From positions 180,433-244,432 of the IMG/VR virus record IMGVR_UViG_3300017786_003484: DNA of 64,000 nt; one strand, given 5' to 3'. The position numbers and the translations under genes are program-made. Numbering within the stretch: position 1 is the stretch's first letter; the number at the start of each line of letters is the position of its first letter. The notes under the pieces are model-generated. The model had not been told where the DNA came from, ran no database searches, and was given only the letters and a program-made list of their open reading frames with translations. Below are positions 1-61,142 of this stretch, in pieces.

Positions 1-609
1 AGAATTAAGAGAGAAGCCAACGAGCCAGACTATTGGCGAGGAGTAATGATATATTTAAATGAGACTATAGACCCTTCTAACTTTAATTTTAATACTACTC
101 CAATTTCAGATTGGACTATGCATTTTCCTAAGATGTTTGATGCTATACGAAATGCAGTCCCTTTTAAATTTATTGAAAAGATTGTTCTCTGGCAAAATGT
201 AAGAGAAATAGATCCTCATTTTGATCCAGACCATTGGGTACTTCCGTGGCCTGATAGTTTAAGAGTTATGTTGCATGACACTAATAAGAAGCCAACATTG
301 TACATGACTAAATGGCCTGAACGTGATGACAACTATAACCCTTCTCCAGTAACATCTATAAAAGGAGGAGACTTTGGAACTAATGCAAGTAATGTAGACA
401 ACAAAGATAAATTTTATGTAGAAGTTCCAGAAGAAACAAACACCTTTCTATTAAATAACGGTGCGTTCTTACATGGAGCAGATATGGGAACAGAAAAAAT
501 TATAATGGCTATCAAAGGAACACCGGATCACTTTACTTGGCTAAAAAGTTTAGAATCTAGTTACAACAAATATAAAAGGGATGACTATGACAGTTTCTTT
601 AAATCTTAG
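1..609 (+). CDS. 2OG-Fe(II)/cupin-type dioxygenase, 5'-partial
   Basis: Frame is open from base 1; HxD (HFD) plus distal His (FLHG); resembles the 26553 ORF. Confidence 0.6.
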   Translation, partial: RIKREANEPDYWRGVMIYLNETIDPSNFNFNTTPISDWTMHFPKMFDAIRNAVPFKFIEKIVLWQNVREIDPHFDPDHWVLPWPDSLRVMLHDTNKKPTLYMTKWPERDDNYNPSPVTSIKGGDFGTNASNVDNKDKFYVEVPEETNTFLLNNGAFLHGADMGTEKIIMAIKGTPDHFTWLKSLESSYNKYKRDDYDSFFKS

Positions 610-1519
610 AAGAAATACAAACGAACATAATGTATCAGGGTCTCTAAATCATAGAGCACCATTTCTAAAAAATCAGATGAAACCATCTAAAACTTTTAAT
701 GATTTAATTAAGTTTGAAATGACTGAAACAGATTGTATTAAGTTAAAAGAAGATACACTAGGTGCGGTTGAGAAGTTTGGTAATTGGGGATATAGATTAA
801 AAAACTATAAAGATGATGCTGGATATTTAGGAACAGGTTTAACCTATAATCCAAGGCACATTGATAGCACAAACGATTTCAAAGAACAAGATATACATCA
901 ACAAGTACAAGGAAACTATGACCCTGGTGCAAAAGGTCTTAATGGACAAAATCCTTATAGTAGGCTTACTGGCAAAGATTCTGTATTTGCTAAAGTAAAT
1001 ACCCATTATGACACCTTCTCGATGTGTTACCGTACTCCTGCTAGTAAACATGGCTATTTGGGCGACTTTTGTAATACTTTTAAAAGAAGCATGGTTAGAA
1101 GCAGTATAAGGGTTATTAACGCCGCCGCTACGGGTCATAATATGGGTAAAGATATTAATGACAAGAAAATGAGAGCAGGAGTAGCATGGCATACAGACGA
1201 ATCAATTTTTGAGAATTTAAGGATTAATATTCCTGTTGAAACTCATCCTATTTTTGTATTAGAACAAAAAGGATATCCACCTCAACATTTACAAGCAAAT
1301 TATGCTTACAGTTGGAACACATCATTATTACATAGAGCATATTGTACAGAGAGAACACAAAGTCCGTTATACAGAACACATATTATGTTAGGCTTTTCAT
1401 GTTGGTGGGATTTTAATGAAACAACAGAAACTTGGACACAAAATGAATTTTTTGGTAAAAAACATCCATGGGATATGTTACATGACGGAGAAGTTATACC
1501 AGGGTTAAAATTGGTATAA
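581..1519 (+). CDS. Asp/Asn beta-hydroxylase-like 2OG-Fe(II) dioxygenase
   Basis: WHTD, RINIP, WNT..LHRA and R.HIMLG motifs. Confidence 0.7.
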   Translation: MTMTVSLNLRRNTNEHNVSGSLNHRAPFLKNQMKPSKTFNDLIKFEMTETDCIKLKEDTLGAVEKFGNWGYRLKNYKDDAGYLGTGLTYNPRHIDSTNDFKEQDIHQQVQGNYDPGAKGLNGQNPYSRLTGKDSVFAKVNTHYDTFSMCYRTPASKHGYLGDFCNTFKRSMVRSSIRVINAAATGHNMGKDINDKKMRAGVAWHTDESIFENLRINIPVETHPIFVLEQKGYPPQHLQANYAYSWNTSLLHRAYCTERTQSPLYRTHIMLGFSCWWDFNETTETWTQNEFFGKKHPWDMLHDGEVIPGLKLV

Positions 1520-1549
1520 CAGTTAGTAGAAAGGAAAATATATAGTAGT

Positions 1550-2299
1550 ATGAGTGTATTCAGTAGTCAAAATCCAAATGCCGTGCAGGGAGTTGGTGCT
1601 TCGCATAGTAAGCAAGGAATTAGAGTTAATGATCTAAAATTAGAGAACGTTGCCGCTGAGGTTGCATTGTCAGCAATAGGCAACTTTGAACCTCTGGACT
1701 ATAAGTTAGACATTCATGGGATTCATAGTGTTATTAATGAAAAATATGGAAATGATTGGGTTGACTATCTTCCTCGTACAGACAGACCTAATAATAGAAA
1801 AGCTATGTCTCTAACAACAATACCAGGATGGACGCATCAAAGTCCACCAAGTATACCAGAAGCTATAAAGCATATGAAAAGAGATGTAAAGGAGTTTGAA
1901 TTTTCAACTCCAACAGATTTGTATAAAGATTGCGATCGTGCATACCCAGGCAATACAAGTTTGAAATCATTCTTAGACGAATGGCAACCCCTAGGACGTA
2001 CCTTTATTGTTAATGCTGGCATTGGCGGATATTTTGTACCTCATAGAGACCATCCTGGAATGCCTCGACCAGCTCTACGCCTAATTGCATTTTTACAAAA
2101 TTGCGGTCCTATGGATTATGACTGGATGATGGACAACAGAAAGGTTGACATTGAACTTGGAAGAGTGTATTATGTTAATACTAGAATGACTCATAGAACT
2201 ATGAGTTGGGTTAATGACAGTTGGCATCTTATATTGAACGTTCCTTTTAATGCAAGTAATGTTTCAAAAGTACTAGAAAATTTACAACACCGTCATTAA
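1550..2299 (+). CDS. Asp/Asn beta-hydroxylase-like 2OG-Fe(II) dioxygenase
   Basis: GGYFVPHRD and GRVYYVNTRMTH motifs. Confidence 0.75.
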   Translation: MSVFSSQNPNAVQGVGASHSKQGIRVNDLKLENVAAEVALSAIGNFEPLDYKLDIHGIHSVINEKYGNDWVDYLPRTDRPNNRKAMSLTTIPGWTHQSPPSIPEAIKHMKRDVKEFEFSTPTDLYKDCDRAYPGNTSLKSFLDEWQPLGRTFIVNAGIGGYFVPHRDHPGMPRPALRLIAFLQNCGPMDYDWMMDNRKVDIELGRVYYVNTRMTHRTMSWVNDSWHLILNVPFNASNVSKVLENLQHRH

Positions 2300-2318
2300 A
2301 ATAACATAGGAGAAATAA

Positions 2319-2951
2319 ATGCGATATTATAATATTGATCTTAGTGGCTATGGCGGTGAAGTAGTCTACGGAAAACTTACAAAAGAACAACACGATTTTT
2401 GGCACGATAAAGAAGAGAGTGATATTACAGCTCATGCTTTTTGGGATCCGTTTGATGAAGGTGATGAAAACTTAGTTCAAGACGAAGAAGATCCTAGGTG
2501 GTTAGGTTATTGGCATGACCTTGATGATATTGTACATCTAAATGGAGGCACAATGTCCGATGCTTGGATTACTGTTGAAGAAGTTTCAAGTGCAGACTAT
2601 GCCGCCTCAAGTATAAAAGAAATTGTTGATAGAGTTGATGTAGCAGAATTTATTAAAACTAATAAGAATGAGTTAACACAAGAAGCTATCGACTTAGATG
2701 ATTATGCAAACGAAGATGGACATAACTATATCTTTTATGGCATGAGTATTGAAAAAGGACAGTTCCATTTATCAACTATTGAGCTTCCTGATGATGAAGA
2801 ATTTGATCTTTCTAAGATTAATTTCTGTGCAACTGAGCTTGATAATGGTGATAACATTGTTGAAGTGTTGTCGTATGGAGATATTGATTTAGATAACGTA
2901 GGCGGTGATTCAACTGGAAAAGGTTATAGTACAACCATATTTGATTACTAA
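2319..2951 (+). CDS. acidic hypothetical phage protein
   Basis: 210 aa ORF with AGGAG SD; very Asp/Glu rich. Confidence 0.7.
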   Translation: MRYYNIDLSGYGGEVVYGKLTKEQHDFWHDKEESDITAHAFWDPFDEGDENLVQDEEDPRWLGYWHDLDDIVHLNGGTMSDAWITVEEVSSADYAASSIKEIVDRVDVAEFIKTNKNELTQEAIDLDDYANEDGHNYIFYGMSIEKGQFHLSTIELPDDEEFDLSKINFCATELDNGDNIVEVLSYGDIDLDNVGGDSTGKGYSTTIFDY

Positions 2952-2962
2952 TAAATAACGAT

Positions 2963-3589
2963 ATGAAACTTACAGTAGGTCCATCTGATTGTATTAGAGA
3001 AATAGAAGTCTTGTTACCAGATGTCTTAGATGTTGGGGTTATGTTAAGTGGAGGTGCTGACTCTGCTATACTACTTTACATGTTAATTGAAGAAAGACGA
3101 AATACAAATTCACAACATATAATTAGACCTTTTACTGTTGCTCGTCCTGATGGTGCTTGGAATTATGTTGCTCCTATAGTAGATTGGATTAGAACAAAAA
3201 CTGATATTCATATTGATGCTCCAATTAAAGTAGGCAATCCAGACTTACATCATAGTAAACAAGGACGTTCAGGAGCAGATGAAGCCTTTAGTAAATATGG
3301 AATTGAGCATATCTTCTATGGTAGTCAAGCACATCCTCCTGTAAAAATGCCAGGTGATTACCCATCAAGACCTAGTGCAGTTAACCTACCTCATACTACT
3401 TGTCCTTTTGCACTTGTTGATAAAAGACATACGTTACATTTATATGATAAACTTCAAGTATGGGATCTAATTAAACTAACTCATTCATGTACACATAGAA
3501 CCGAAGGCCGATGCGGAGAGTGTTATAATTGTACAGAACGTTCCTGGGCATTAGAAGAGCTTGGGTTCGCTGACCCTGGAGAAAAATAA
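2963..3589 (+). CDS. QueC/ExsB-like PP-loop ATP pyrophosphatase
   Basis: SGGADS PP-loop and C-terminal THSC..CGECYNCTER zinc site; divergent from canonical QueC. Confidence 0.7.
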   Translation: MKLTVGPSDCIREIEVLLPDVLDVGVMLSGGADSAILLYMLIEERRNTNSQHIIRPFTVARPDGAWNYVAPIVDWIRTKTDIHIDAPIKVGNPDLHHSKQGRSGADEAFSKYGIEHIFYGSQAHPPVKMPGDYPSRPSAVNLPHTTCPFALVDKRHTLHLYDKLQVWDLIKLTHSCTHRTEGRCGECYNCTERSWALEELGFADPGEK

Positions 3590-5163
3590 TGGCTCAGATA
3601 ATAATTTGTGCTGGCATATCAGTTATTCCATATATTAGACCTGTTGGAACATTTCAATTAGCAAATGTATTAAGACAAGCTGGATACACAGTTCAAGTTA
3701 TTGATCAATATCCATGGATTGCACATTTAGGTTTAGATGTTGTTAAGCAGTTATTAGATAAGTTTGTAGGACCCGAAACATTATGGATTGGGTATAGTAG
3801 CACTTGGTTTCGTAAGATTGAACAGATGGTTCCTGGCTCTCCAATGGCCTGGCACCTGCCAAGTAAGCCAGGAACAACTCCTGGTAATGAAGATTTAAGA
3901 ACTAATACATTATTATTTTCAGAAGAGGAAATACATGACTTACGAGCATTTGTACATAAGAAAAATCCTAATGTTAAATTTGTATTAGGAGGTGCTAGAT
4001 CTCCCAAAGGACGTATTGCTTTATTTTCTCCATTGGTTGACATTTATATAGAAGGTTATGCTGATAATACAGTAGTACGACTTAGTAAGTATTTAGAAGG
4101 AAAACTTCCTAGCCTAGATGCCAAGCCAGTTAGTTACGGAGGCAAAGAAATACCAGATGTATATATGATTAATGATGATGTTAAAGCAGAATCATTTGAT
4201 TATAATAACTTTAAATTTTCTTGGCATGATTCTGATTTAGTTAATTGGGGAGAAACCTTACCTATGGAAATTGCTCGAGGTTGTATTTTTAATTGTGCTT
4301 TTTGTTCATACCCATTAAACGGACGTAAGAAAATGGATTACTTAAAGGATCCGCTAATATTAAGAGAACAAATGATAGAAAACTATGAAAGATTTGGTAC
4401 AACAAACTATTTCTTTTTAGACGATACATTCAATGAAAGTGTAGACAAACTTGAGATATTAGCAGAACATACATTTTCTAACTTAGATTTTAGGCCACGG
4501 TTTGGAGCCTTTATGAGGGCAGACTTAATTGCACATAATCCTAGGCAGATACAACTATTAAAAGATATAGGTGTCAGCGGTGCATTCTTTGGCATTGAAA
4601 GTTTAAATTATGAAGCAAACAAATCTGTAGGTAAAGGTATTAAGAAGGATAAACTTTATGATTCCTTGTGTAGAATTAGAGAAGAATGGCCAGATGATGT
4701 TGTTACTGACTCTCAGTTTATTATGGGGTTGCCTAATGATAGCGAAGAAACAATTACAGAATGGGTTACAGAATTATTACATCCTGACTTTCCTTTAGAT
4801 GCGGCAAAGATTGAACCACTTGCATTAGATAAAGATCAAGTTAAGTCTACATGGGTAAGCAGTTTTGCCCGATTCCCTGACAGGTATGGATTTAGTTTTC
4901 CAGATGATACAAAACCTTGGCTTTGGGTAAACAATACAGGATTTTCCAGTGATGATGCACAAAAACTTAAAATGAAAATGGCCTCACAATGGAGAGTTAA
5001 AGATAAGCCTGCATGGGTAGGAGACTACGGATTAATGAATGTTGGTGTACCAGCAGATGTTATTGAGGATAGGAAAAAAGGTGCAAAATTTGATGGTAGG
5101 GACCGTGGTAGACGTATATCTTTTGTAAAGGAATATATTAAGAAGCTATTGGCTCTACCTTAA
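3589..5163 (+). CDS. B12-binding-domain radical SAM enzyme
   Basis: ARGCIFNCAFC (CxxxCxxC), FLDDTFN, GIES, IMGLP; N-terminal cobalamin-binding-like domain. Confidence 0.9.
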   Translation: MAQIIICAGISVIPYIRPVGTFQLANVLRQAGYTVQVIDQYPWIAHLGLDVVKQLLDKFVGPETLWIGYSSTWFRKIEQMVPGSPMAWHLPSKPGTTPGNEDLRTNTLLFSEEEIHDLRAFVHKKNPNVKFVLGGARSPKGRIALFSPLVDIYIEGYADNTVVRLSKYLEGKLPSLDAKPVSYGGKEIPDVYMINDDVKAESFDYNNFKFSWHDSDLVNWGETLPMEIARGCIFNCAFCSYPLNGRKKMDYLKDPLILREQMIENYERFGTTNYFFLDDTFNESVDKLEILAEHTFSNLDFRPRFGAFMRADLIAHNPRQIQLLKDIGVSGAFFGIESLNYEANKSVGKGIKKDKLYDSLCRIREEWPDDVVTDSQFIMGLPNDSEETITEWVTELLHPDFPLDAAKIEPLALDKDQVKSTWVSSFARFPDRYGFSFPDDTKPWLWVNNTGFSSDDAQKLKMKMASQWRVKDKPAWVGDYGLMNVGVPADVIEDRKKGAKFDGRDRGRRISFVKEYIKKLLALP

Positions 5164-6100
5164 ATTTATCTAATTGCAAGTCGACAGCAGTCTTACAATA
5201 TCTTTTAGTACATATAATATTTTCCTGTAGTAAGTCAAATTTATCTATACGTCCTAACTTTTGTATACTACAAATACCAGCATATGCATTACCATCAAAG
5301 TTTACACGAATACCACTATTACCAGCAGTACAACTCCAGCCTTGCATTTGATGCTGATTGGTAGTTACAAGATCAAAAGGATTAACTAAATTGTAAGAAG
5401 TTTGATCATCGTTATAAGCAAATACTTTTCTATCTACTTCATCAAATCTTCTCATTATACCTGACCAGCCGCTTTTCTTTTCTCTAATATATTGCAACTG
5501 ACTTTCTTCGTATTCATAAGGCTTGCCATCATTTATACCGCCGGAATGATCTGTTAGTATCTTTCCATTTACTTGTTTCTTAAGTCTGTCTGTTAATGCG
5601 TCATATAAATGCTTAACCGTTTCCCATTGTATTGGATCACACATCATATTAAACGATACATCACAACCATTATCTAGTAAGTATTCTCCTAGTAAATTAA
5701 TACGATCCATCTTACTAAACCCTGGATGTAAGCTCATAGTCACCTTGTCCGGTAGGCTTTCTAATCCTTGCCACCATTTTAAAGCACGACTGCCATTACT
5801 TACAGTTTCCAATATACCGTGTGGTTTAAGTCTGTGTATAATTTCTCCATACATAGGATGCAATGTTGGCTCACCGCCTGATAAACATACCTGTAAAAAC
5901 CTATCACCTTTGTGTACATTTATTAGCCTGTCTAAGAAACCATCTATTTCTTCGTTAGTTGGGTAACCCATTTTACGTCCGTGATGATGATCACCTGAAT
6001 GTAGGTTAGTAGGACAATAAGCACATTCAAAATTGCAGAAATCAGTAATTGTCCAATACACATATAATGTAGGAGTAACCTTTCTTATTTCTCTAAGCAC
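5138..6100 (-). CDS. radical SAM enzyme with C-terminal Twitch/SPASM-like cysteines
   Basis: CNFECAYC, SGGEPTL, C-terminal CTAG..C..C..C. Confidence 0.9.
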   Translation of the reverse strand: MLREIRKVTPTLYVYWTITDFCNFECAYCPTNLHSGDHHHGRKMGYPTNEEIDGFLDRLINVHKGDRFLQVCLSGGEPTLHPMYGEIIHRLKPHGILETVSNGSRALKWWQGLESLPDKVTMSLHPGFSKMDRINLLGEYLLDNGCDVSFNMMCDPIQWETVKHLYDALTDRLKKQVNGKILTDHSGGINDGKPYEYEESQLQYIREKKSGWSGIMRRFDEVDRKVFAYNDDQTSYNLVNPFDLVTTNQHQMQGWSCTAGNSGIRVNFDGNAYAGICSIQKLGRIDKFDLLQENIICTKRYCKTAVDLQLDKFKVEPIAS

Positions 6101-6932
6101 TTTTTTCTTTCCATGTTTTATTATGCTCTTCTAATTGTTCTGATAATATTTTTTGCTTAGGAGGCTGTACCATTTGAGGTGAGTCTTTTGTAGCCCAATC
6201 CCAATGTTTATCTGCATCAGTTAGTTTTTTACTTGTAAAGATACTTAATCCAATTTTACGTTTAACACCCCATCTAGGAAATGCAGTACTACAATGTAGC
6301 CTGTCTCTTGGAAATGTCATTGGTATCCCAGGTGTCCATTGAAAATGTTTATCTACTGATAGTCCTTCGAATGTACTTTGTGGTATATGTTTAGCATATT
6401 TTAATAGTATAGGATCAAAATAGCCATCTTCTTTTAATCCAATTACATCACTATAATCAGTAACATCAGTATTCCATTCTTTTCTATCAGTCTTCCAACC
6501 TTTGTTATCATTTTTCATTCTATCTTTGTTTACGTTTCCTTTTGCAAAGAAACCTGCATCTTTCTTCCATTGCTGATCCATTACTATAAATCTATTATTT
6601 TCTGGAAAATATTCTAATTCTAAATTACGTTCAATGAATAAAGGAAATACAAATGTTTGCAAAACCTGATCTGGGGATTCTCCTCTTCCTGTATCAGTAT
6701 GCACCATATACCCTGCTTCTGTTGAAAAATAGTTTCCACCGGTAACCACCCATTCTTCTCCTAGGTATTCGTTTATCATAGGACCTAGTAAATGCAAAGC
6801 ACTAGTCATTCCAAAAGCAAATTTTCTTCCAAATGCATGTTCGGTGGTGTGTACGTTATTTTCAAATTCATAAAGTAACTTATCAATTACACTTTGATCT
6901 ATTTCATTTAATGTGGTTACGGGAGTTCTCAT
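6093..6932 (-). CDS. 2OG-Fe(II)-type dioxygenase
   Basis: VHTD, F.RDRLHC and K.GLSIF motifs. Confidence 0.6.
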   Translation of the reverse strand: MRTPVTTLNEIDQSVIDKLLYEFENNVHTTEHAFGRKFAFGMTSALHLLGPMINEYLGEEWVVTGGNYFSTEAGYMVHTDTGRGESPDQVLQTFVFPLFIERNLELEYFPENNRFIVMDQQWKKDAGFFAKGNVNKDRMKNDNKGWKTDRKEWNTDVTDYSDVIGLKEDGYFDPILLKYAKHIPQSTFEGLSVDKHFQWTPGIPMTFPRDRLHCSTAFPRWGVKRKIGLSIFTSKKLTDADKHWDWATKDSPQMVQPPKQKILSEQLEEHNKTWKEKSA

Positions 6933-7891
6933 CTTCTGTTTTCATAACTTCCTGGCTGAGCCATTTTAGGAACAGGAAATATCACGTCTACCTGTTCTTT
7001 TATACTATTAGTTATCTTCGGTACAAACTCTCCTGCTTTTAAATTATCTATTAGGTGAGGAATTTTATGGCTTCTTGGTATTGATACTGCCCACGGAAAC
7101 CTTAGATTAAAATATGCAATTAAGAATTGAGGAACCGTTGCTCCAATGCTTTCTGCTATAGGTTCTACTTGCTTCAATTCAGGCATATCCCAAAAGTCTC
7201 CTCTATAAGATTCTGTTGGATTCTGTTGCGGTCTTTGATATCCACTAGCTCTACCTCCACCAAATACACTATGTGGCATACCTGTTAGTTCTGCATCAAA
7301 TTTAGTGTTCCATGAAACAACTCTCTCATATCCATTAGCACCTTTTTCTGTGTAAAATTGATCCGGATATCTATGCTTAGGTCCGTAACGAAATTGTATA
7401 ACTTGCAGTCTTTGTTCTTTAGGATAGTTTTCAGCCTCTTCAAAAGTTCTCCATTCATGTATTGCTCTGCCTTTTAAATTACTACAACCTACACTCCTAA
7501 TTGTTCCTTCGGATTGACATTCAGCCATCCATTCTGCACATTTTTCTATACTAACACCTTCCATAAAAAAATGTAAAAGGTAAGAGTCGACATAGTCTGT
7601 TTGCAATCGATCTAATGATTTTTTAAGAGAATCTCTAAACGAATTCCTATCCATTGCATTGTTAGGTAGTACTTTTGATACTATTTCAAATTCGCTTCTT
7701 GGGATACTAGATCTAGTTATAGAATTGCCTAGCAAGGTTTCTACTCTACCATCTGAGTATTGTTCAGCAGTATCAAACATTCTATAGCCCAAGTTTAAAA
7801 CTTTATCCATTAAGCCTTCTTGTCTTACTGCCGCCTCAGGTGTCCATGCCCATCCGCTAGTTCCTAGTCCTATTCTGTTCTTAAAAAACAT
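6929..7891 (-). CDS. aldo/keto reductase
   Basis: GLGT, FDTAEQY, SKV, SLDRLQTDYVDSYLLH, VGCSN (D-Y-K-H tetrad). Confidence 0.9.
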   Translation of the reverse strand: MFFKNRIGLGTSGWAWTPEAAVRQEGLMDKVLNLGYRMFDTAEQYSDGRVETLLGNSITRSSIPRSEFEIVSKVLPNNAMDRNSFRDSLKKSLDRLQTDYVDSYLLHFFMEGVSIEKCAEWMAECQSEGTIRSVGCSNLKGRAIHEWRTFEEAENYPKEQRLQVIQFRYGPKHRYPDQFYTEKGANGYERVVSWNTKFDAELTGMPHSVFGGGRASGYQRPQQNPTESYRGDFWDMPELKQVEPIAESIGATVPQFLIAYFNLRFPWAVSIPRSHKIPHLIDNLKAGEFVPKITNSIKEQVDVIFPVPKMAQPGSYENRR

Positions 7892-7929
7892 GAAAAACTC
7901 CTCTTTTTTTCTATTATATGGTATTTAGT

Positions 7930-7984
7930 GGTTGACCTTTAGGCCCAATTGCCGTATAGTAAGTATATAATAAGGAATTAGGAG
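7930..7984 (+). promoter_or_regulatory. sigma70-type early promoter plus conserved leader
   Basis: TTGACC 7932-7937, 17 nt spacer, TATAGT 7955-7960, then ATAAGGAATTAGGAG. Confidence 0.85.
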
Positions 7985-7990
7985 ATATTA

Positions 7991-11636: not shown

Positions 11637-11713
11637 GGGCCTGTAGCTCAGCTGGATAGAGCGCCAGTCTACGAAACTGGAAGTCAGGGGTTCGAATCCC
11701 TTCAGGCCCACCA
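11637..11713 (+). tRNA. tRNA-Arg(ACG)
   Basis: Cloverleaf GGGCCTG/CAGGCCC, anticodon arm CCAGT-CTACGAA-ACTGG, GTTCGAATC, encoded CCA. Confidence 0.97.
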
Positions 11714-13559: not shown

Positions 13560-14132
13560 ATGAAAACAAATTTAAGTATTATCGGAGATATGTTCGAGTG
13601 GGAGGACGGCAATCCTAATAATGAGGATCGTACTGGACATTCAGTAATGTTGGTTGGAGAGAGACTAATACGTTCTGCTACTAAACAGGACATGGCTACT
13701 AAAATATTTGGTGTTATTGGTCCTAGTAATGATAATACTATGATTGTTGCCAATGCATGGGAACATGAATGGCATCATAAACATGCTAGAGATAAGTTTG
13801 GTCGCCAACTAATAGAAGAACAAACTTTAATGACATGGGTAAGAGATGGAAGACGTGAAACACATGAAGCTGATCGCTATCCAGAAGATTTAGTTATACC
13901 TGCTGATGTAGAATACTGGACACATATGCCAGGAAATCCAAAAAGATTAATGAGACCTGTACTATCAGAACGTTATCACGATGGTACACAAAGCTCAGGT
14001 GACTATGTGAGCAGACTCAAAAGAAACGAGTGGGCAGTCGTAGTTATATTAGGTGAAGTAGAAATACAAGAAGAGTCTCCTGCAAATACTTCTTGGGTGC
14101 ATATCCGAGATAATAGGTATTATATTAGGTAA
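13560..14132 (+). CDS. stand-alone Peptidase_G2-like intramolecular-chaperone domain protein
   Basis: MFEWEDGNPNNEDRTG.SV, GVI, W..K..RDKFGR, YVSR.KR.EW..V..LG.V.I; start moved to ATG 13560. Confidence 0.7.
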   Translation: MKTNLSIIGDMFEWEDGNPNNEDRTGHSVMLVGERLIRSATKQDMATKIFGVIGPSNDNTMIVANAWEHEWHHKHARDKFGRQLIEEQTLMTWVRDGRRETHEADRYPEDLVIPADVEYWTHMPGNPKRLMRPVLSERYHDGTQSSGDYVSRLKRNEWAVVVILGEVEIQEESPANTSWVHIRDNRYYIR

Positions 14133-14731
14133 TGTGGTTTTATAAGAATTGGAGGATTATAACGGAAATTCCTCAAACTATGTTAGACCCTATTATATGG
14201 CAATGCCTTCCAGCAAACTGGAATCACGAAAGCAATACAAGAACCGAACCTCCTTTAAAAGATGGCAAACTAATTGAGTTTGCATTTCCTATAAGAGATA
14301 GAGAAAAAGAACCAACAGAAGAACAGTATAAGATATTAGGTTCTTGTACAGAATTAACAGATTGGTTACTGTTCGAAGGCTATAAATGGATTCGAGGTGA
14401 GGTAGCAACTCTTATGCCAGGAGTCAAGTTAGGATGGCATGCAGACCCTCAATGGTTCCATGATCAATGCGTCCGTATACATGTTCCTATAATTACAAAT
14501 GAACATTGTGTGCAGTTATGGAAAGACGACAAAGAAGTAGAGTTTAACAAGCATATGCAGGTTGGCTATGCTTATGAACTAAACAATAGGGCTATACATA
14601 GTGCTTATAACGCGGGCAATGAACCACGTGTACACTTAGTATTAGATTGTATGGCAGAAGATGCTTGGAAACATGCATTAGAAAACAAGGTTAATGTTGT
14701 TGAAGTTATAGATGAGAATCCAAGTTACTAG
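14132..14731 (+). CDS. Asp/Asn beta-hydroxylase-like dioxygenase
   Basis: L.PG..LGWHAD, RIHVPI.TN, ELNNRAIHSAYN.G..PRVHLVLD. Confidence 0.85.
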   Translation: MWFYKNWRIITEIPQTMLDPIIWQCLPANWNHESNTRTEPPLKDGKLIEFAFPIRDREKEPTEEQYKILGSCTELTDWLLFEGYKWIRGEVATLMPGVKLGWHADPQWFHDQCVRIHVPIITNEHCVQLWKDDKEVEFNKHMQVGYAYELNNRAIHSAYNAGNEPRVHLVLDCMAEDAWKHALENKVNVVEVIDENPSY

Positions 14732-16313: not shown

Positions 16314-16545
16314 CGTCTTTGCGTCCTCCTGCTTCTATGTTATCTAAATTATTTTCAGGATCTTCACCTCTAGCATCCTCATCAATTCGTCTTCTCATTC
16401 CAGTATCTGTGAACATACTGGTTGCTATAAAAGTACAAGCGGCTAACATTGGTATTACATATACCATTTTTTCTGTGGAGTAGGCTACTAGGTAAGTTGG
16501 TATTATTACTATTAATGCTTTTACAAAGCCCTCACGAAGTGCCAT
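16303..16545 (-). CDS. small two-TM membrane protein
   Basis: Two hydrophobic segments; coupled to neighbours. Confidence 0.65.
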   Translation of the reverse strand: MALREGFVKALIVIIPTYLVAYSTEKMVYVIPMLAACTFIATSMFTDTGMRRRIDEDARGEDPENNLDNIEAGGRKDDGS

Positions 16546-17803
16546 CTACAAATTTATCCAATCTATTCTGTATATATTCACGAGTTTGTTTTTCGTCTAT
16601 ATACATTGTCTCATATTTATTAGTAATACCAAACCTTGCATTGGGTCTTTGATTAGTTTCTACATTTGACACATTTTGCCTACTATAAAGTAAACCTACA
16701 TTTTCTATTTTTAACTTAAACATATAATAAGAATCATTGTTATCCAAATCATAAATGTAATCTCTGGCAACTTGCTTATATGTTGCGGCTGAACTTCCGA
16801 TCTTATCTCCGTTATTATTGTTACACATAGCCCATACTTGATAATCATCATTATGATACCAGTTAATAATTTTATTATCCGCAGTTTTTACATCAACTGT
16901 ATCATTAAAGTATACCATACCACGTTTTGCACAATTTGCATATTTTATATTAAAGATATACCACCAAAAGAAATCATGTAAACTGTTTATTTCAACTGGT
17001 GATGTCTTAGCATGTAAATCGAGTTTGTTATAGAACCTTTCTCCGAATCCTTCGGTAGGCAATTTAACACCGGTAAAAGGATAACCTTGTCTCTTTGGTA
17101 TTGAGAAATATAATATTAATAGGTCTTTAAAAGTACTATAAGGAACATCTGGATCAGTTACATATTTAATTTTATTTTCTATACTGGCAATACTATTACT
17201 ACTTAGACTATTTGTATACTGTTTCCATGTATAATATAATTGACTAGCAAAGGTAGTACCGAATAAACAATCTCCAGTATCTCCTGTAATAGGAAGGTAT
17301 CCTTCGTTAATTAAGTCATCATACTTGTTAAAATTTGCATCAATAATTTTAAACTTTCCTTGTATATATTCTTGCCAGAAGATAGGATTGTTTATAATAG
17401 CAGAAGACGTAGTGCATATTGCTATGTCTTTAAGATATTTTACTCCTATGTTTTTAATTAGTGAGCATAATATTAAAGTGGAATCAATACCACCTGAATA
17501 CATGACAGCATACTTGTTTCCTTTTCTTATACCATTGAGTATATCCATAGCACGATTATCAGTAATATCTTCAAACGTTTTGTTAAACTTTGGATCATAC
17601 TTAGGCATTTCTAATCCTGGCCAAACTTCTTCTTCCCAAGGAGTAGTCCATGTTGCTTCACATCGACTTGAAAGTCTATTTGGATTTAAACGTCTAGCTA
17701 TATCAATATAAAAACGGCCATCTTCATTAGTTCCGTGCCATGCATCAACCCAAAATTCATTTTGATAACCATTAAAAACAGTATTTGTTAAGATAGTTTT
17801 CAT
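16532..17803 (-). CDS. asparagine-synthetase-like PP-loop protein lacking glutaminase domain
   Basis: YSGGIDST, TGDTGDCLFG, DFFWW. Confidence 0.75.
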   Translation of the reverse strand: MKTILTNTVFNGYQNEFWVDAWHGTNEDGRFYIDIARRLNPNRLSSRCEATWTTPWEEEVWPGLEMPKYDPKFNKTFEDITDNRAMDILNGIRKGNKYAVMYSGGIDSTLILCSLIKNIGVKYLKDIAICTTSSAIINNPIFWQEYIQGKFKIIDANFNKYDDLINEGYLPITGDTGDCLFGTTFASQLYYTWKQYTNSLSSNSIASIENKIKYVTDPDVPYSTFKDLLILYFSIPKRQGYPFTGVKLPTEGFGERFYNKLDLHAKTSPVEINSLHDFFWWYIFNIKYANCAKRGMVYFNDTVDVKTADNKIINWYHNDDYQVWAMCNNNNGDKIGSSAATYKQVARDYIYDLDNNDSYYMFKLKIENVGLLYSRQNVSNVETNQRPNARFGITNKYETMYIDEKQTREYIQNRLDKFVDGTS

Positions 17804-18516
17804 ACTGAGAATCCTGTAACTCTACCACTAAAGCGATTTTGTTTTAATTCTTCGCTCTGCTCTTCGTCTATCATTTGATAAAATTGATTTCTATATAGCA
17901 CAACATCTGGAACTTTAGACCAAAATTCATTGATGAGTTTCATAGCATGATTTTTATTTCTTGCCTTATATAAGATTCTTAATATGGTCACCGAAATACC
18001 ATCTTCTACCTCGGTTTGGTCCACCGGTACAGATAAGCCGTTAGTGTCTATTCCACTTAGCTCTTCAATTATATGTTTAGACGGAAGTACATTAAAGATT
18101 AGATTAGTTATCCTAACAGCCTTAACACATTTTGCAATGAATATGGCTAATTCTTGTAAGTCATTTAATGCTTCTTTAGCAACTTCTTCTGTATAATCAT
18201 CTGGCCAACCTACATGTTCTACAGTACTATTAAGTCTTCTAAAAGATGGCCATTGCCTACTATAAAATATACTTGACGACGCATACATTAAATTTTTATC
18301 TTTAAGAGTATACTCTAAACAATTCTTTCCTCCAAAGCTAGGTTCGTTTTTAAGTGTTCCAACAACTAAAGAAAGTTTACTACTAAGAACCTGTGCAGTT
18401 TCAACAGCCGTATAAGGATCAAATTGATCAACAAATACTATTCGATCTAGCCCTGGAGCATACATCATATAGTTTCCGTAAAACGGTTCAAAGTTCTTTG
18501 TTTCATATGTAGCCAT
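17800..18516 (-). CDS. hypothetical protein coupled to the Asn-synthetase-like gene
   Basis: ATGA overlap; start moved to ATG 18516 (TAAGTA-N5-ATG). Confidence 0.7.
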   Translation of the reverse strand: MATYETKNFEPFYGNYMMYAPGLDRIVFVDQFDPYTAVETAQVLSSKLSLVVGTLKNEPSFGGKNCLEYTLKDKNLMYASSSIFYSRQWPSFRRLNSTVEHVGWPDDYTEEVAKEALNDLQELAIFIAKCVKAVRITNLIFNVLPSKHIIEELSGIDTNGLSVPVDQTEVEDGISVTILRILYKARNKNHAMKLINEFWSKVPDVVLYRNQFYQMIDEEQSEELKQNRFSGRVTGFSV

Positions 18517-18563
18517 AACATTACTTACTGGCAAAAATAGTTTCTGTTTTACCAATTTTTTTC

Positions 18564-18592
18564 TTGACAACTTACTTTATCTGTGTTACAAT
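18564..18592 (+). promoter_or_regulatory. sigma70-type promoter
   Basis: TTGACA-N17-TACAAT. Confidence 0.75.
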
Positions 18593-22773: not shown

Positions 22774-22774
22774 G

Positions 22775-52853: not shown

Positions 52854-53095
52854 TGAAAGTATACGATCTAGACAAAGAGCTAACTAAGTTAAAGACATTG
52901 GCTGGTATTATTGATACATCTGGTCGTAAGGATGATTCAAATCCTCAAAGTAGTCCACTAACTTATGGTGGAACAGAACGAGCTGAGTATATGAGAAAAC
53001 ATAAGATACAGCCAGGCACAGACGAATGGTTTAAGTTATGGTTTGCACGAGAGGCTCTTACTGGTGAAGACAGGTTCCCTAGAAATAAGAAATAA
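52853..53095 (+). CDS. conserved small phage protein
   Basis: LK.LAGI and I.PGT.EWFKLWF motifs. Confidence 0.7.
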   Translation: MKVYDLDKELTKLKTLAGIIDTSGRKDDSNPQSSPLTYGGTERAEYMRKHKIQPGTDEWFKLWFAREALTGEDRFPRNKK

Positions 53096-60071: not shown

Positions 60072-61142
60072 ATGCGGAAGTTAGAAAAAGAAACCTACTT
60101 GAACCCAAGATGGGGTTCAATGTTTGAAGGAATGTCCTATAACGAAATAATGGACTTGGGATTTTCCTTTTGGCATGCTAAGTTAGTTGAAAGACAATTC
60201 TTTTGCTGGCGTGGTTTAGATTCTAAAATGACTGATGAGCAACTATGGGACTTAGGTACATTGGTTGGTAAGCCTTGGGATACAGAGGGTTATAAAGTTG
60301 GAGCAGATATCTCAGGCTTTAAATTTGATGGAACTACTGACAAAGAAAATGAAGCAGTGGTTGACTCTTCTACAGGACAAGATATTATTGAGGATATGAA
60401 AACCTCAAAGGATAAGCCAGTTAGTTATTTCTTTTCTGGTAATACTATATTTGGTGACAAATATATGGCTTATCATTCAGACCTCCCTCACACATTAGCA
60501 ACTGGACACGAACCTTATCCTGCTAGAGCTTTATTGATGGTTAATATGCCTGAGGATAGTTCAGGTGATACACAATGGCTTGATATGGAAGGTGCTTGGG
60601 AACAAATGACTGATGAAGAAAAGGCTCCTTATCAAGGGCTATTCATTAAACAACAACATATGTATCATCCAGGAAGAAAGTATAGCACATTTCCTTTTCT
60701 CAAACAGAATCCGTGGAATGGTAAATGGTCACCAAGATTAAACTGTATTGCAGGAAATAGAAAAGCAAAGGCTTGGATAGCACCGGGCGGAGTAATTAAA
60801 AAAGGAGTAGGATCTTTAGGTATCAAAGAAGCAAGGCAACTTGTTTTTGATTTATACGATATACTAGAAACTAAAGAACATGCCTTGTATACACATCAAT
60901 GGCAGAATGGTGATATTCTCCTCTACACCAATTGGCCTTCAGTTCATGCTAGAGCCGGAGTTAATATTAACCAAGACAGCGGTGAAAAGAGAGAATTAAA
61001 AAGAATTACTATTGATACACCGTTTCCAGATGATTATATGGTTGACAGAGGTAGTGATTATTTTCCTGCTAGAGTTAAGAATCCTAAATACAGTGAGTTC
61101 CCTCAAATTGAAGAGCCATTTCCAGGCTTCTTTAAAAAGTAA
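60072..61142 (+). CDS. TauD/TfdA-family 2OG dioxygenase
   Basis: YHSD, GDT.W.D...AW, HQWQ.GD.L...N...HAR, R.L.R. Confidence 0.85.
   Translation: MRKLEKETYLNPRWGSMFEGMSYNEIMDLGFSFWHAKLVERQFFCWRGLDSKMTDEQLWDLGTLVGKPWDTEGYKVGADISGFKFDGTTDKENEAVVDSSTGQDIIEDMKTSKDKPVSYFFSGNTIFGDKYMAYHSDLPHTLATGHEPYPARALLMVNMPEDSSGDTQWLDMEGAWEQMTDEEKAPYQGLFIKQQHMYHPGRKYSTFPFLKQNPWNGKWSPRLNCIAGNRKAKAWIAPGGVIKKGVGSLGIKEARQLVFDLYDILETKEHALYTHQWQNGDILLYTNWPSVHARAGVNINQDSGEKRELKRITIDTPFPDDYMVDRGSDYFPARVKNPKYSEFPQIEEPFPGFFKK

What the first reader, a model, noticed from the sequence alone, without database searches (positions are those of the whole stretch)
1..7891. Dense tailoring-enzyme island, part of a window-wide toolkit with no visible substrate
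Seen: in 7.9 kb, four HxD..H dioxygenases, a QueC-like PP-loop enzyme, a B12-type radical SAM, a second radical SAM and an aldo-keto reductase. Across the window there are nine dioxygenases (1, 581, 1550, 6093, 14132, 26553, 27499, 43336, 60072), three radical SAMs, three PP-loop enzymes, a PaaI thioesterase, QueD and an A-type Fe-S carrier. Known: this mix is typical of RiPP/natural-product clusters and of nucleic-acid hypermodification pathways, and IscA-family carriers supply Fe-S clusters. Inference: the phage encodes a large uncharacterised modification system acting on virion proteins, small peptides, tRNA or DNA.
Basis: partly seen in the sequence, partly recalled or inferred. Interest (0 to 1): 0.7.

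Follow-up and report, generated by a model that had tools for sequence, protein, structure and literature searches.

The report
Conserved phage hydroxylase–ligase enzyme cassette
A widespread, uncultured marine jumbo phage carries a real, conserved cluster of oxygen-dependent hydroxylases, a QueC-like ATP-using ligase and radical-SAM enzymes whose substrate is unknown; it looks like a tailoring pathway for a carboxylate-bearing molecule rather than a DNA-modification system.

Summary
Window 1-7891 encodes four double-stranded-beta-helix (Fe/2OG-type) dioxygenases, a QueC-fold PP-loop enzyme, a class-B-like radical SAM, a second radical SAM with a twitch/SPASM-like Cys tail, and an aldo-keto reductase. 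None reaches any curated equivalog cut-off. The contig is a 244-kb, about 74%-complete marine jumbo phage, distantly related to Pseudomonas phage PA5oct.

New here:
- Eleven related phage contigs keep the order ORF1-ORF2-ORF3-QueC-like, then ORF8 on the opposite strand.
- The second radical SAM is present in 6 of the 11 and the AKR in 3.
- The B12-type radical SAM and an acidic ORF are insertions specific to this genome.
- Outside the clade, the QueC-like subfamily again sits beside AspH-like cupins in 5 of 10 contexts, including the cultured Ralstonia phage RsoM2USA (gp134/gp135).
- The subfamily keeps SGGxDS and the Zn cysteines but lacks all three 7-deazaguanine-binding motifs.
- No TGT/DpdA, FolE, ThyA or TET gene was found.

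Best reading: hydroxylation coupled to ATP-dependent carboxylate amidation or ligation on a non-nucleic-acid substrate. One window-wide "system" is not shown. Interest is moderate; this is a new variant of known enzyme kinds.

The parts
1..609 (+). ORF1, C-terminal 202 codons of a 326-aa gene that begins 371 nt upstream of the window. It has an N-terminal beta-rich domain plus a Fe/2OG-type dioxygenase domain (H197-x-D199...H282).
   Evidence: AlphaFold model pLDDT 81. The 50 Foldseek PDB matches listed are all 2OG-oxygenase-fold proteins, such as proline hydroxylases and AlkB homologues. A paralogue lies at genome 134852-135715.
581..1519 (+). ORF2, an AspH-like (PF05118-related) cupin dioxygenase of 312 aa, with motif WHTDE...LHRA.
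   Evidence: Iterative profile search links it to the PF05118 paralogue at 14132 in both directions (4.2e-23 and 1.4e-19). hhalign gives 84% probability. Atlas neighbours include an Asp_Arg_Hydrox cluster.
1550..2299 (+). ORF3, an AspH-like cupin dioxygenase of 249 aa (H165-R-D167...H215). It is very conserved and sits directly upstream of the QueC-like gene in relatives.
   Evidence: tblastn to Pelagibacter phage Mosig 'Asp_Arg_Hydrox' gives 1e-12. Profile link is 5.8e-22. Mean column identity is 74% over 10 homologues.
2319..2951 (+). ORF4, an acidic 210-aa protein (pI 4.05) with no known family. It is an insertion specific to this genome, lying between ORF3 and the QueC-like gene.
   Evidence: No Pfam, PHROG or PADLOC hit. 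It is absent from all 11 syntenic relatives. It is covered by metatranscriptome contigs.
2963..3589 (+). QueC-fold PP-loop ATP pyrophosphatase of 208 aa. It has SGGADS, an invariant Lys154 and a four-Cys zinc motif, and it lacks the deazaguanine-binding motifs.
   Evidence: Pfam QueC 2.1e-8. The subfamily comprises 596 clusters at 50% identity. The family profile's best PDB match is Cap9 (9e-8, full length), then QueC (C-terminus only). Motif census over 60 members.
3589..5163 (+). Class-B-like (B12-domain) radical SAM of 524 aa, with CX3CX2C at residue 232. It is absent from this position in all relatives. A paralogue lies at 53043-54596.
   Evidence: Pfam Radical_SAM 3.4e-12 and B12-binding 8.4e-4. 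NCBIfam PhpK, BzaD and HpnJ families match far below their cut-offs. It is 27% identical to the 53043 paralogue. The homologue in L001 lies elsewhere on its contig.
5138..6100 (-). Radical SAM of 320 aa, with CX3CX2C at residue 22 and four invariant C-terminal Cys (257, 277, 297, 302) in a twitch/SPASM-like pattern. Its start overlaps the end of ORF8.
   Evidence: Pfam 1.1e-10. Only the N-terminal core matches QueE, viperin, MoaA or PapB models, all far below cut-off. Present in 6 of 11 relatives.
6093..6932 (-). ORF8, a Fe/2OG dioxygenase of 279 aa (H78-x-D80...H213...R220), the conserved convergent partner of the cassette.
   Evidence: AlphaFold pLDDT 78. The 50 Foldseek PDB matches listed are all Fe/2OG oxygenases, and Swiss-Prot matches are mainly ectoine and proline hydroxylases. 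Atlas neighbours are viral clusters, then PhyH and 2OG-FeII_Oxy_3.
6929..7891 (-). Aldo-keto reductase of 320 aa and first gene of the minus-strand operon. D41, Y46, K74 and H108 are candidate catalytic residues.
   Evidence: Pfam Aldo_ket_red 3.3e-32. The closest solved relatives are 2,5-diketo-D-gluconate reductases (1.6e-24). Present in 3 of 11 relatives.
14132..14731 (+). Asp_Arg_Hydrox (PF05118) dioxygenase, one of four paralogues on the contig that Pfam detects.
   Evidence: Pfam 1.8e-6 and 28.3 bits, above the cut-off.
16532..18570 (-). Gene pair of a 256-aa unknown partner and a 423-aa AsnB-like PP-loop protein (SGGIDS). It belongs to a six-member paralogue family.
   Evidence: Paralogy. 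265 metagenomic homologues without a Pfam domain. Only a marginal match to the asparagine synthetase PP-loop in the PDB. The QueC-like profile reaches the family at 1e-8 to 1e-15.
53043..54596 (+). Second class-B-like radical SAM, a paralogue of 3589-5163.
   Evidence: Pfam Radical_SAM 1.4e-18. NCBIfam class-B families match below cut-off. Paralogy at 4.5e-46.
60072..61142 (+). TauD/TfdA-family Fe/2OG dioxygenase.
   Evidence: Pfam TauD 2.5e-15 and 57.6 bits, above the cut-off.

Best explanation
SHOWN: The island is a real, vertically conserved enzyme cassette of a clade of marine jumbo phages.
- Three AspH-like or DSBH dioxygenases (ORF1, ORF2, ORF3) are followed directly by a QueC-fold PP-loop/zinc enzyme.
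- This unit faces a convergent unit made of another Fe/2OG dioxygenase (ORF8), often a twitch/SPASM-like radical SAM, and sometimes an aldo-keto reductase.
- In this genome two extra genes were inserted: an acidic ORF and a B12-type radical SAM.

INFERRED: The pairing of a QueC-fold enzyme with AspH-like cupins recurs in unrelated phage contexts, so these two act in one pathway.
- The PP-loop enzyme adenylates a carboxylate and passes it to a nitrogen nucleophile (amide, amidine or nitrile formation), as QueC, Cap9, asparagine synthetase and WbpG-type enzymes do.
- The cupins hydroxylate the same substrate.
- The radical SAM and the AKR add redox steps.

MY LEANING: The substrate is a non-nucleic-acid, carboxylate-bearing small molecule or envelope/glycan building block (amino-acid- or sugar-acid-like). 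This would be analogous to the sugar- and amino-acid-modifying clusters predicted in cyanophages. I do not think the substrate is phage DNA or tRNA. The other tailoring enzymes in the window are further, separately inherited members of the same expanded enzyme families, not parts of one machine.
For: Synteny: 11 related IMG/VR contigs keep ORF1-ORF2-ORF3-QueC-like and convergent ORF8 at 40-71% aa identity. ORF3's stop lies 1-2 nt from the QueC-like start.

Independent recurrence of QueC-like next to AspH-like cupins:
- L012: operon ORF8-like/QueC-like/ORF3-like with 4-nt overlaps.
- L010, L011 and L013.
- Ralstonia phage RsoM2USA gp134/gp135.

Radical SAM genes also recur near the QueC-like gene in L010, L013 and L053.

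Chemistry of the QueC-like protein: it keeps SGGxDS (56/60), PFx4K (49/60) and the Zn cysteines (56/60). It has 0/60 of YxQxHxxE, VPxRN and YPDC, the substrate-side motifs defined in PMC13329287.

Small-molecule leaning:
- Many of the closest folds of ORF1 and ORF8 are free-amino-acid or natural-product hydroxylases (proline 3- and 4-hydroxylases, ectoine hydroxylase, AndA, SnoN, HygX).
- The AKR is closest to 2,5-diketogluconate reductases and overlaps ORF8.
- In the cultured pelagiphage Mosig, the ORF3-like gene lies among a DegT-type sugar aminotransferase, three MoaA-like radical SAMs, TauD, a methylase and an acetyltransferase.
- The same contig carries a carbamoyltransferase next to five radical SAM genes.
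- Iyer et al. 2021 (PMC7824862) predicted comparable cyanophage clusters to decorate polysaccharide or make a metabolite.

Against nucleic acid: no TGT/DpdA, FolE, ThyA-type or TET gene was found.

Natural presence: the island is near-identical in 14 marine DNA runs, and parts of it occur in marine RNA libraries.
Against: - No substrate or product was identified, and all functional assignments stop at superfamily level.
- Synteny within one clade may only reflect shared descent.
- Outside the clade, the cupin is absent from about half of the QueC-like neighbourhoods (L015, L017, L053, L055, L056).
- The solved protein closest to the QueC-like profile is Cap9, which modifies a protein N-terminus.
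- The archetype of PF05118 hydroxylates protein Asp/Asn, by family definition.
- The cassette is flanked by ClpX, ClpS, Hsp20 and S21.
- Twitch/SPASM radical SAMs mostly act on peptides.
- Fold matches also include PHD2, P4H-EF-Tu and AlkB homologues at similar scores.
- The contig is about 74% complete, so missing pathway genes could lie in the unseen quarter.
- RNA-library contigs may derive from contaminating DNA.
Confidence: 0.42

Rival explanations
1. Protein or peptide post-translational modification. The cupins hydroxylate Asp/Asn, Pro, Arg or Lys residues of host or virion proteins. The QueC-fold enzyme ligates or amidates a protein carboxylate or N-terminus, as Cap9 and QatC do. The twitch/SPASM and B12 radical SAMs modify side chains.
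For: - The best solved match of the QueC-like family profile is Cap9, a protein-conjugating enzyme (bioRxiv 10.1101/2025.04.06.647259).
- PF05118 is named after a protein Asp/Asn hydroxylase.
- The radical SAM at 5138-6100 has a twitch/SPASM-like Cys tail, and L010 carries a Pfam-SPASM radical SAM beside the module.
- NCBIfam hits include RiPP C-methyltransferase and PapB-type maturases, though weakly.
- Neighbours are ClpX, S21, Hsp20, ClpS, DnaJ, deformylase and a ClpB-like protein.
- Elsewhere in the window, a collagen-repeat protein and a P4H-like oxygenase lie by fibre genes and an S8 protease.
- Fold matches include PHD2 and the P4H-EF-Tu complex.
Against: - No conserved small precursor ORF lies inside the cassette in 11 relatives.
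- The Cap9-type motifs for the deazaguanine cargo are absent, and no CD-NTase, QatB or TGT-like partner was found.
- The AKR and the closest dioxygenase folds point to small molecules.
- The chaperone neighbours may be mere co-residents of a host-takeover region.
Confidence: 0.27
2. Nucleic-acid hypermodification. The QueC-like protein, the QueE-like radical SAM and the QueD gene at 21757 make a 7-deazaguanine derivative, or another base modification, for phage DNA or for tRNA. The dioxygenases would act as base hydroxylases.
For: - There are Pfam QueC and PTPS/QueD hits.
- The radical SAM's only PDB sequence hit is QueE (0.0028), and PHROG labels it QueE-like (2.3e-6).
- The ORF1 fold also matches AlkB homologues and nucleoside-antibiotic hydroxylases.
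- The related phage PA5oct is reported to carry a deazaguanine system, and some jumbo phages carry only subsets of it (PMC7824862).
- dCMP deaminase and a 5'-nucleotidase are in the window.
Against: - No TGT/DpdA, FolE, ThyA-type or TET/JBP gene lies in the 244 kb, and no TGT in four related contigs.
- QueC substrate motifs are found in 0 of 60 family members.
- TIGR00364 QueC scores 29.7 bits against a cut-off of 150, and QueE scores 35 bits against 206.
- QueD lies 18 kb away in another operon.
- None of the seven phage tRNAs is a queuosine-type tRNA.
Confidence: 0.1
3. There is no common pathway. The island is a hypervariable dump of independently acting auxiliary genes, like the many orphan 2OG-Fe(II) oxygenases of marine cyanophages. 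They are kept together only by descent and by tolerance of insertions at this spot.
For: - ORF4 and the B12 radical SAM are absent from this position in all relatives, and the AKR and the second radical SAM in many. L020 lacks ORF3, the QueC-like gene and ORF8.
- Marine T4-like cyanophages carry one to five 2OG-Fe(II) oxygenases of unknown role (PMC3037559).
- The contig has many scattered paralogues of each enzyme family.
- The complex prediction for QueC-like with ORF3 gave no verdict.
Against: - The QueC-like/AspH-like adjacency recurs in different gene orders and in distant phages, including a soil Ralstonia phage, often with overlapping stop and start codons.
- ORF3 is under strong constraint, with 74% mean column identity.
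Confidence: 0.18

Closest known systems
QueC / PF06508 superfamily: canonical preQ0 synthase QueC, and the protein-deazaguanylating Cap9 (type IV CBASS) and QatC
   Same: It shares the PP-loop SGGxDS motif, a conserved Lys in PF(x)4K, a C-terminal four-Cys zinc motif and a length of about 200 aa. The family profile aligns to Cap9 over its full length at 9e-8. ATP-dependent activation of a carboxylate is therefore expected.
   Different: The substrate-side motifs YxQxHxxE, VPxRN and YPDC are absent in 60 of 60 members. It scores far below the QueC equivalog cut-off. No queE/folE/TGT operon, CD-NTase or QatB partner accompanies it. The partners are AspH-like cupins instead. The family is phage-borne, not part of a defence island.
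Aspartyl/asparaginyl beta-hydroxylase family (PF05118; the family is known to include AspH, and from my own knowledge LpxO/OlsC-type lipid hydroxylases)
   Same: It shares the HxD...H metal triad on a double-stranded beta-helix. One paralogue at 14132, and four on the contig, pass or approach the Pfam cut-off. ORF2 and ORF3 join them by profile search.
   Different: ORF1-3 are too divergent for Pfam. They belong to virus-only clusters. No EGF-like substrate or membrane anchor was examined, and the substrate is unknown.
Cyanophage sugar/amino-acid-modifying gene clusters predicted by Iyer et al. 2021 (PMC7824862), and the multi-copy 2OG-Fe(II) oxygenases of T4-like cyanophages (PMC3037559)
   Same: These are marine phages with clusters mixing 2OG dioxygenases, cupin DSBH enzymes, carbamoyltransferase and HAD phosphatases. 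Their function is unproven. They are variable between relatives.
   Different: Here the signature is a QueC-fold PP-loop enzyme plus AspH-like cupins plus radical SAMs. No halogenase or HemK-like methylase was seen. The host phage belongs to the PA5oct-related jumbo lineage, not to a cyanomyovirus.
Tailoring island of Pelagibacter phage Mosig EXVC030M (gp73-gp88)
   Same: It contains an ORF3-like AspH-like gene (28% identity, 1e-12), a TauD dioxygenase and several MoaA-like radical SAMs in one block.
   Different: tblastn found no QueC-like gene in Mosig. Its partners are a sugar aminotransferase, an acetyltransferase, a methylase and a nitroreductase.
RiPP maturation clusters (SPASM/twitch and class-B radical SAM maturases)
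   Same: The radical SAM has a C-terminal Cys-rich tail, and the class-B radical SAM has weak hits to RiPP C-methyltransferases and ApyD.
   Different: There is no conserved precursor peptide gene. No leader-recognition (RRE) protein or dedicated peptidase or exporter lies in the cassette. All hits are far below family cut-offs.

Membership tests
Canonical QueC (7-cyano-7-deazaguanine synthase) | PP-loop SGGxDS and C-terminal zinc-binding cysteines | tested here: met
   SGGADS lies at residue 29. C176, C184 and C187 are invariant and C190 is nearly so. SGGxDS and the Cys motif are each present in 56 of 60 family members.
Canonical QueC (7-cyano-7-deazaguanine synthase) | Substrate-side motifs YxQxHxxE, VPxRN and YPDC (PMC13329287) | tested here: not met
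   0 of 60 members carry any of the three motifs.
Canonical QueC (7-cyano-7-deazaguanine synthase) | Score above the curated equivalog cut-off (TIGR00364) | tested here: not met
   29.7 bits against a cut-off of 150.3. Only residues 146-193 align.
Canonical QueC (7-cyano-7-deazaguanine synthase) | Genomic linkage with queD, queE, folE and a transglycosylase | tested here: not met
   No TGT or FolE gene lies in the 244 kb or in four relatives (TGT only for the relatives). QueD is 18 kb away. The adjacent radical SAM scores 35 bits against the QueE cut-off of 206. The contig is about 74% complete.
Cap9 / QatC protein-deazaguanylation enzymes | Cap9-type [YF]xQx5E and YxDC motifs, plus a partner CD-NTase with TGT-like Cap10, or QatA/B/D | tested here: not met
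   [YF]xQx5E is found in 0 of 60 members and YxDC in 1 of 60. The PADLOC QueC model matches only the C-terminal 49 residues, and no TGT gene is present. Only PFx4K is shared (49 of 60).
Fe(II)/2-oxoglutarate dioxygenase superfamily | Double-stranded beta-helix fold | tested here: met
   For both the ORF8 and ORF1 models, the 50 PDB matches listed are all 2OG-oxygenase-fold proteins (probability mostly 0.9-1.0, TM 0.3-0.6).
Fe(II)/2-oxoglutarate dioxygenase superfamily | Invariant HxD/E...H metal triad | tested here: met
   ORF8 has H78, D80 and H213. ORF1 has H197, D199 and H282. ORF3 has H165, D167 and H215. All are invariant in their alignments.
Fe(II)/2-oxoglutarate dioxygenase superfamily | 2-oxoglutarate binding and turnover | not testable with these tools
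   Conserved basic residues (R220 in ORF8, R216 in ORF3) are candidates only. An enzyme assay is needed.
Asp_Arg_Hydrox (PF05118) | Pfam score above the gathering cut-off | tested here: inconclusive
   Met by 14132 (28.3 bits against 22.6) and by genome position 125061. ORF1-3 get no hit at E<=0.01. ORF2 and ORF3 join only through an iterative profile search. For ORF1 there is only a language-model lead.
Class B (cobalamin-dependent) radical SAM | CX3CX2C radical SAM core preceded by a B12-binding domain | tested here: inconclusive
   The core is clear (3.4e-12, Cys at 232, 236 and 239). The B12-binding Pfam hit is 8.4e-4, below the cut-off. NCBIfam PhpK and BzaD alignments start near residue 106.
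SPASM/twitch radical SAM | C-terminal auxiliary-cluster cysteine motif | tested here: inconclusive
   Four invariant Cys (257, 277, 297, 302) lie in a C-x-A-G...D-G...C pattern in 5 homologues. There is no Pfam SPASM hit, and only weak NCBIfam hits to twitch and PapB models.
Prokaryotic viperin (pVip) / QueE | Full-length match to the family model | tested here: not met
   The pVip model matches only positions 2-99 of 257. QueE matches only residues 19-132, at 35 bits against a cut-off of 206.
Aldo-keto reductase | Family model above cut-off, plus the catalytic Asp-Tyr-Lys-His | tested here: met
   112 bits against a cut-off of 24. D41, Y46, K74 and H108 were read from the sequence. Their positions were assigned by eye, not by structural alignment.
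RiPP biosynthetic gene cluster | Conserved precursor-peptide gene next to the maturases | tested here: not met
   No conserved small ORF lies within the cassette in 11 syntenic relatives. An 80-aa ORF precedes the QueC-like gene only in the distant L053.

The most novel reading that the evidence does not exclude
The QueC-fold enzyme and its AspH-like cupin partners may form a phage-encoded protein-conjugation or terminal-modification system. This would be a viral counterpart, or a countermeasure, to the QueC-family defence enzymes Cap9 and QatC. It would tag or de-tag host or phage proteins and feed into the co-encoded ClpS/ClpX/ClpB proteostasis set. That would extend QueC-type protein modification from bacterial immunity to the phage side of the conflict.
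Probability: 0.08. Interest if true: 0.85.

Novelty: new variant of a known kind. Interest (0 to 1): 0.55.

Why it matters
Marine phages carry many orphan 2OG oxygenases whose role has been an open question since the first cyanophage genomes. This work gives that question a concrete handle in four ways.
- A defined, conserved cassette pairs these oxygenases with a distinct QueC-fold subfamily (about 600 sequence clusters, nearly all unannotated) that has lost the deazaguanine-binding motifs.
- The phage carrying it is cosmopolitan in seawater.
- The gene pair also exists in a cultured phage, Ralstonia phage RsoM2USA gp134/gp135, so a deletion and mass-spectrometry experiment is feasible.
- The QueC fold is already known to have been repurposed for cofactor synthesis, sugar amidation and protein conjugation. 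Finding this subfamily's substrate would add another chemistry to that list and would show what these abundant phages change in their hosts.

Tried and rejected
- Near-identity DNA search of 1-8000 against isolated phages found nothing.
- Pfam and PHROG on the four dioxygenase candidates gave no hits at E<=0.01.
- A profile of the ORF8 family against PDB sequences gave only noise.
- hhalign between shallow family alignments was mostly uninformative, apart from AAH-ORF2 (84%) and ORF1-26553 (41%).
- IMG/VR scans with the second radical SAM and the AKR as single queries found no relatives. Their homologues appeared only through synteny.
- Six-frame searches of the contig for TGT, GTP cyclohydrolase I, thymidylate synthase, Tet_JBP, 2OG-FeII_Oxy_5 and PhyH were all negative.
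- TGT was also negative in four related contigs.
- Complex prediction for the QueC-like protein with ORF3 gave no verdict (score 0.00), which is neither support nor evidence against binding.
- Host inference from the phage ClpX against cellular genomes gave scattered phyla; the best hit is probably a phage contig binned into a MAG, so there is no conclusion.
- Literature searches found no description of this cassette or of phage Asp_Arg_Hydrox genes.
- The ORF at 49578-51215 contains a CX3CX2C string but has no radical SAM hit, so it is not counted.
- I rejected the idea that the island is a random mosaic, which L001-L003 first suggested, once 11 syntenic contigs were in hand.

Full report
SOURCE. 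The window is the last 64 kb of a single 244,432-bp IMG/VR virus record. The record is linear and CheckV rates it about 74% complete. G+C is about 35%.

Its clamp-loader protein is 58.6% identical to that of the Pseudomonas jumbo phage PA5oct group. It is 41-47% identical to those of other jumbo phages (Atu_ph07, RsoM2USA).

The 7.9-kb stretch occurs at 96-99% of sampled words in 14 seawater or marine metagenome runs from at least 12 studies. Parts of it occur in six marine RNA libraries. Short contigs that are 99-100% identical, from four metatranscriptomes, lie on ORF3, ORF4, the QueC-like gene and both radical SAM genes. DNA carry-over in those libraries cannot be excluded. This is therefore a cosmopolitan, uncultured marine jumbo phage. 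Its host remains unknown.

CHECK OF THE OBSERVATION. Nine ORFs fill positions 1-7891 with almost no spacer. Pfam confirms four of them directly:
- a QueC-like protein at 2963-3589;
- a radical SAM at 3589-5163, with a sub-threshold B12-binding hit;
- a second radical SAM at 5138-6100(-);
- an aldo-keto reductase at 6929-7891(-).

NCBIfam aligns the first radical SAM to class-B families (PhpK, BzaD, HpnJ, RiPP C-methyltransferase). All of these fall far below their cut-offs.

The four motif-called dioxygenases are invisible to Pfam and PHROGs. I tested them in other ways.
- ORF8. It has 35 homologues, all unannotated. H78, D80, H213 and R220 are invariant. An AlphaFold model (pLDDT 78) matched only Fe/2OG oxygenases among the 50 PDB matches listed, and mostly so in Swiss-Prot models. 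ESM-Atlas neighbours are viral clusters, then PhyH and 2OG-FeII_Oxy_3.
- ORF1. The gene really starts 371 nt upstream of the window and encodes 326 aa. A model built from 14 homologues (pLDDT 81) again matched only 2OG-oxygenase-fold proteins. H197, D199 and H282 are invariant.
- ORF2 and ORF3. An iterative profile search seeded with the Pfam-validated Asp_Arg_Hydrox paralogue at 14132 pulls both in (1.4e-19 and 5.8e-22). ORF2 finds 14132 reciprocally. ORF3 also matches a gene annotated Asp_Arg_Hydrox in Pelagibacter phage Mosig.

- Clear: 14132 and TauD at 60072.
- Tentative: 43336, 26553 and 27499.
- Confirmed: the third radical SAM (53043), the SGGxDS proteins at 16532 and 46130, the 4HBT thioesterase, PTPS/QueD and the IscA-type carrier.

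The whole contig is richer still. It has 10 SGGxDS proteins and about 11 proteins with a CX3CX2C motif, most of which match Pfam Radical_SAM. Five of these stand in tandem next to a carbamoyltransferase. It also has at least 14 dioxygenase candidates.

ANATOMY AND CONSERVATION. Scanning IMG/VR with the ORF1 family returned 15 loci. Eleven of them show the same order:
- upstream: ClpX, S21, Hsp20, ClpS and one unknown gene;
- then ORF1, ORF2, ORF3 and the QueC-like gene;
- then, on the other strand, ORF8, followed by the conserved downstream genes.

ORF3's stop lies 1-2 nt from the QueC-like start in these relatives. The second radical SAM is present in 6 of the 11 and the AKR in 3. ORF4 (acidic, pI 4.05) and the B12-type radical SAM occur at this position only in the present genome. 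One relative has the B12-type enzyme elsewhere on its contig. One relative (L020) keeps ORF1-ORF2 but lacks ORF3, the QueC-like gene and ORF8.

So the island is a conserved core plus lineage-specific additions. It is neither a fixed nine-gene operon nor a random mosaic.

THE QueC-LIKE SUBFAMILY. An exhaustive search found 596 clusters (at 50% identity) of proteins about 200 aa long. Of 60 sampled members, 59 hit Pfam QueC.

The family profile's best solved match is Cap9, over its full length at 9e-8. Next comes QueC, matched only at the zinc-binding C-terminus, followed by ThiI, asparagine synthetase, LarE and TtuA.

I compared the family with the signature defined for canonical QueC and Cap9 in PMC13329287. 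The results come:
- retained: SGGxDS (56/60), PF(x)4K (49/60) and the Cys cluster (56/60);
- absent: YxQxHxxE, VPxRN and YPDC (0/60 each).

The ATP-pyrophosphatase machinery is therefore kept and the deazaguanine pocket is not. It is a member of the PF06508 superfamily, but not a QueC and not a Cap9 or QatC.

RECURRENCE OUTSIDE THE CLADE. I sampled QueC-like neighbourhoods at 27-46% identity.
- L012: an operon of ORF8-like, QueC-like and ORF3-like genes with overlapping codons.
- L010: QueC-like, an AspH-like gene, an ORF3-like gene and a SPASM radical SAM.
- L011: an AspH-like gene beside the QueC-like gene.
- L013: two QueC-like genes bracketing an AspH-like gene, with two radical SAMs nearby.
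- Ralstonia jumbo phage RsoM2USA (cultured, from soil): gp134 (QueC-like) overlaps gp135, which is an AspH-like cupin by profile (4e-19).

Five other contexts lacked a detectable AspH-like neighbour (L015, L017, L053, L055, L056). One of these pairs the gene with an R2K ATP-grasp, a radical SAM and an 80-aa ORF. Another has Acb1 nearby.

Half of the independent contexts share the pairing, in different gene orders. That is more than shared descent explains. I could not run a formal phylogeny-aware test.

MECHANISM. What the families establish is this:
- a PP-loop enzyme of this fold adenylates an oxygen of a carboxylate or amide, then transfers the group to nitrogen;
- DSBH enzymes with an intact triad hydroxylate, or otherwise oxidise, C-H bonds using O2 and 2-oxoglutarate;
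- the AKR reduces carbonyls with NAD(P)H.

I infer a pathway that combines hydroxylation with ATP-driven amidation or ligation of one carboxylate-bearing substrate.

Several observations tilt the choice of substrate toward a small molecule or a glycan/envelope building block.
- Many of the nearest folds of ORF1 and ORF8 are free-proline, ectoine and natural-product hydroxylases.
- The AKR resembles diketogluconate reductases and overlaps ORF8.
- In the cultured pelagiphage Mosig, the ORF3-like gene lies among a DegT-type sugar aminotransferase, an acetyltransferase, a methylase, TauD and MoaA-like radical SAMs.
- The contig's carbamoyltransferase and radical SAM block recalls the cyanophage clusters that Iyer et al. 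predicted to decorate polysaccharide or make a metabolite (PMC7824862).

The protein-modification reading remains a serious rival. It is supported by the Cap9 likeness, the PF05118 archetype, the twitch/SPASM-like tail of the radical SAM and the ClpX/ClpS/Hsp20/S21 neighbours.

Nucleic-acid modification is the weakest reading. The contig lacks TGT/DpdA, FolE, ThyA-type and TET genes, and related contigs lack TGT. The QueC motifs are missing. QueE and viperin models match only the generic radical SAM core.

COMPARISON AND NOVELTY. Multi-copy orphan 2OG oxygenases are well known in marine cyanophages (PMC3037559), and jumbo phages are known to carry tailoring clusters (PMC7824862). The general picture is therefore not new.

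I did not find three things described in the literature searched:
- this QueC-fold subfamily;
- its recurrent pairing with AspH-like cupins;
- the conserved cassette in a cosmopolitan marine jumbo phage clade.

I rate it a new variant of known kinds, of moderate interest. There is a clear experimental route through RsoM2USA gp134/gp135 and through heterologous expression.

LIMITS.
- No substrate was identified.
- Fold matches have modest TM-scores (0.3-0.6).
- Three of the nine window-wide dioxygenases rest on weak evidence.
- The contig is incomplete.
- The complex prediction gave no verdict.

Noticed in passing
upstream of the window, genome 176844-179407 (L008:3845-6405); window 31646-35196: A proteostasis set brackets the island. 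Upstream lie ClpX (with its zinc finger), ribosomal protein S21, Hsp20 and the ClpS adaptor. Inside the window lie DnaJ, peptide deformylase and a ClpB/ClpA-like double-AAA protein.
   Followed up: partly
genome 159093-171952 (L006/L007), upstream of the window: Five radical SAM genes stand in tandem; four are paralogues of 393-514 aa. They are followed by a NodU/CmcH-type carbamoyltransferase and an alpha/beta hydrolase, forming a second and larger tailoring block.
   Followed up: partly
window 16532-18570(-), 46130-47458; genome 119049, 128888, 137587, 150008: A six-member family of 345-488-aa SGGxDS proteins resembles only the asparagine synthetase PP-loop. Three members are preceded by a paralogous partner of about 250 aa that belongs to no known family. 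There are 265 metagenomic homologues, several of them on contigs of 240-330 kb.
   Followed up: partly
window 36330-45716: A 770-aa collagen-repeat protein lies here. A weak prolyl-4-hydroxylase-type oxygenase (43336-44196, with a paralogue at genome 117157) sits between a fibre-like protein (41321-43324) and an S8 subtilase (44175-45716). This may be a collagen-like fibre with its own hydroxylase.
   Followed up: no
window 2319-2951: ORF4 is a very acidic 210-aa protein (pI 4.05, 51 Asp+Glu) with no family. It is inserted only in this genome between ORF3 and the QueC-like gene, and it is among the best-covered stretches in RNA libraries.
   Followed up: partly
window 23409-23909; 14728-15288(-); 62743-63078: A 166-aa ORF matches only a piece of the DNA polymerase III alpha NTPase domain, so it may be a split or fragmented polymerase gene. 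HNH and GIY-YIG homing-type endonuclease genes lie elsewhere in the window.
   Followed up: no
window 21185-23146: A tight run of genes holds an Rv2179c-like 3'-5' exoribonuclease, PTPS/QueD, a 121-aa unknown and an IscA-type Fe-S carrier. QueD is thus linked to an RNase and an Fe-S carrier, not to the QueC-like gene.
   Followed up: no
L015:5001-6769; L053:421-3632: In one distant phage contig, the QueC-like gene lies two genes from an Acb1 (anti-CBASS) gene. In another it follows an R2K ATP-grasp, a radical SAM and an overlapping 80-aa ORF, an arrangement that looks like a RiPP cluster.
   Followed up: no
genome 126864-238306 (window 11637-11713, 55894-56057, 57801-57874): The contig has seven tRNA genes (Thr, Arg x2, Gly, Leu, Met, Trp). 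None is a queuosine-type tRNA.
   Followed up: no
window 16071-16545(-): Two 80-aa ORFs overlap the end of the AsnB-like PP-loop gene in the same operon. One looks like a membrane protein with an acidic tail.
   Followed up: no
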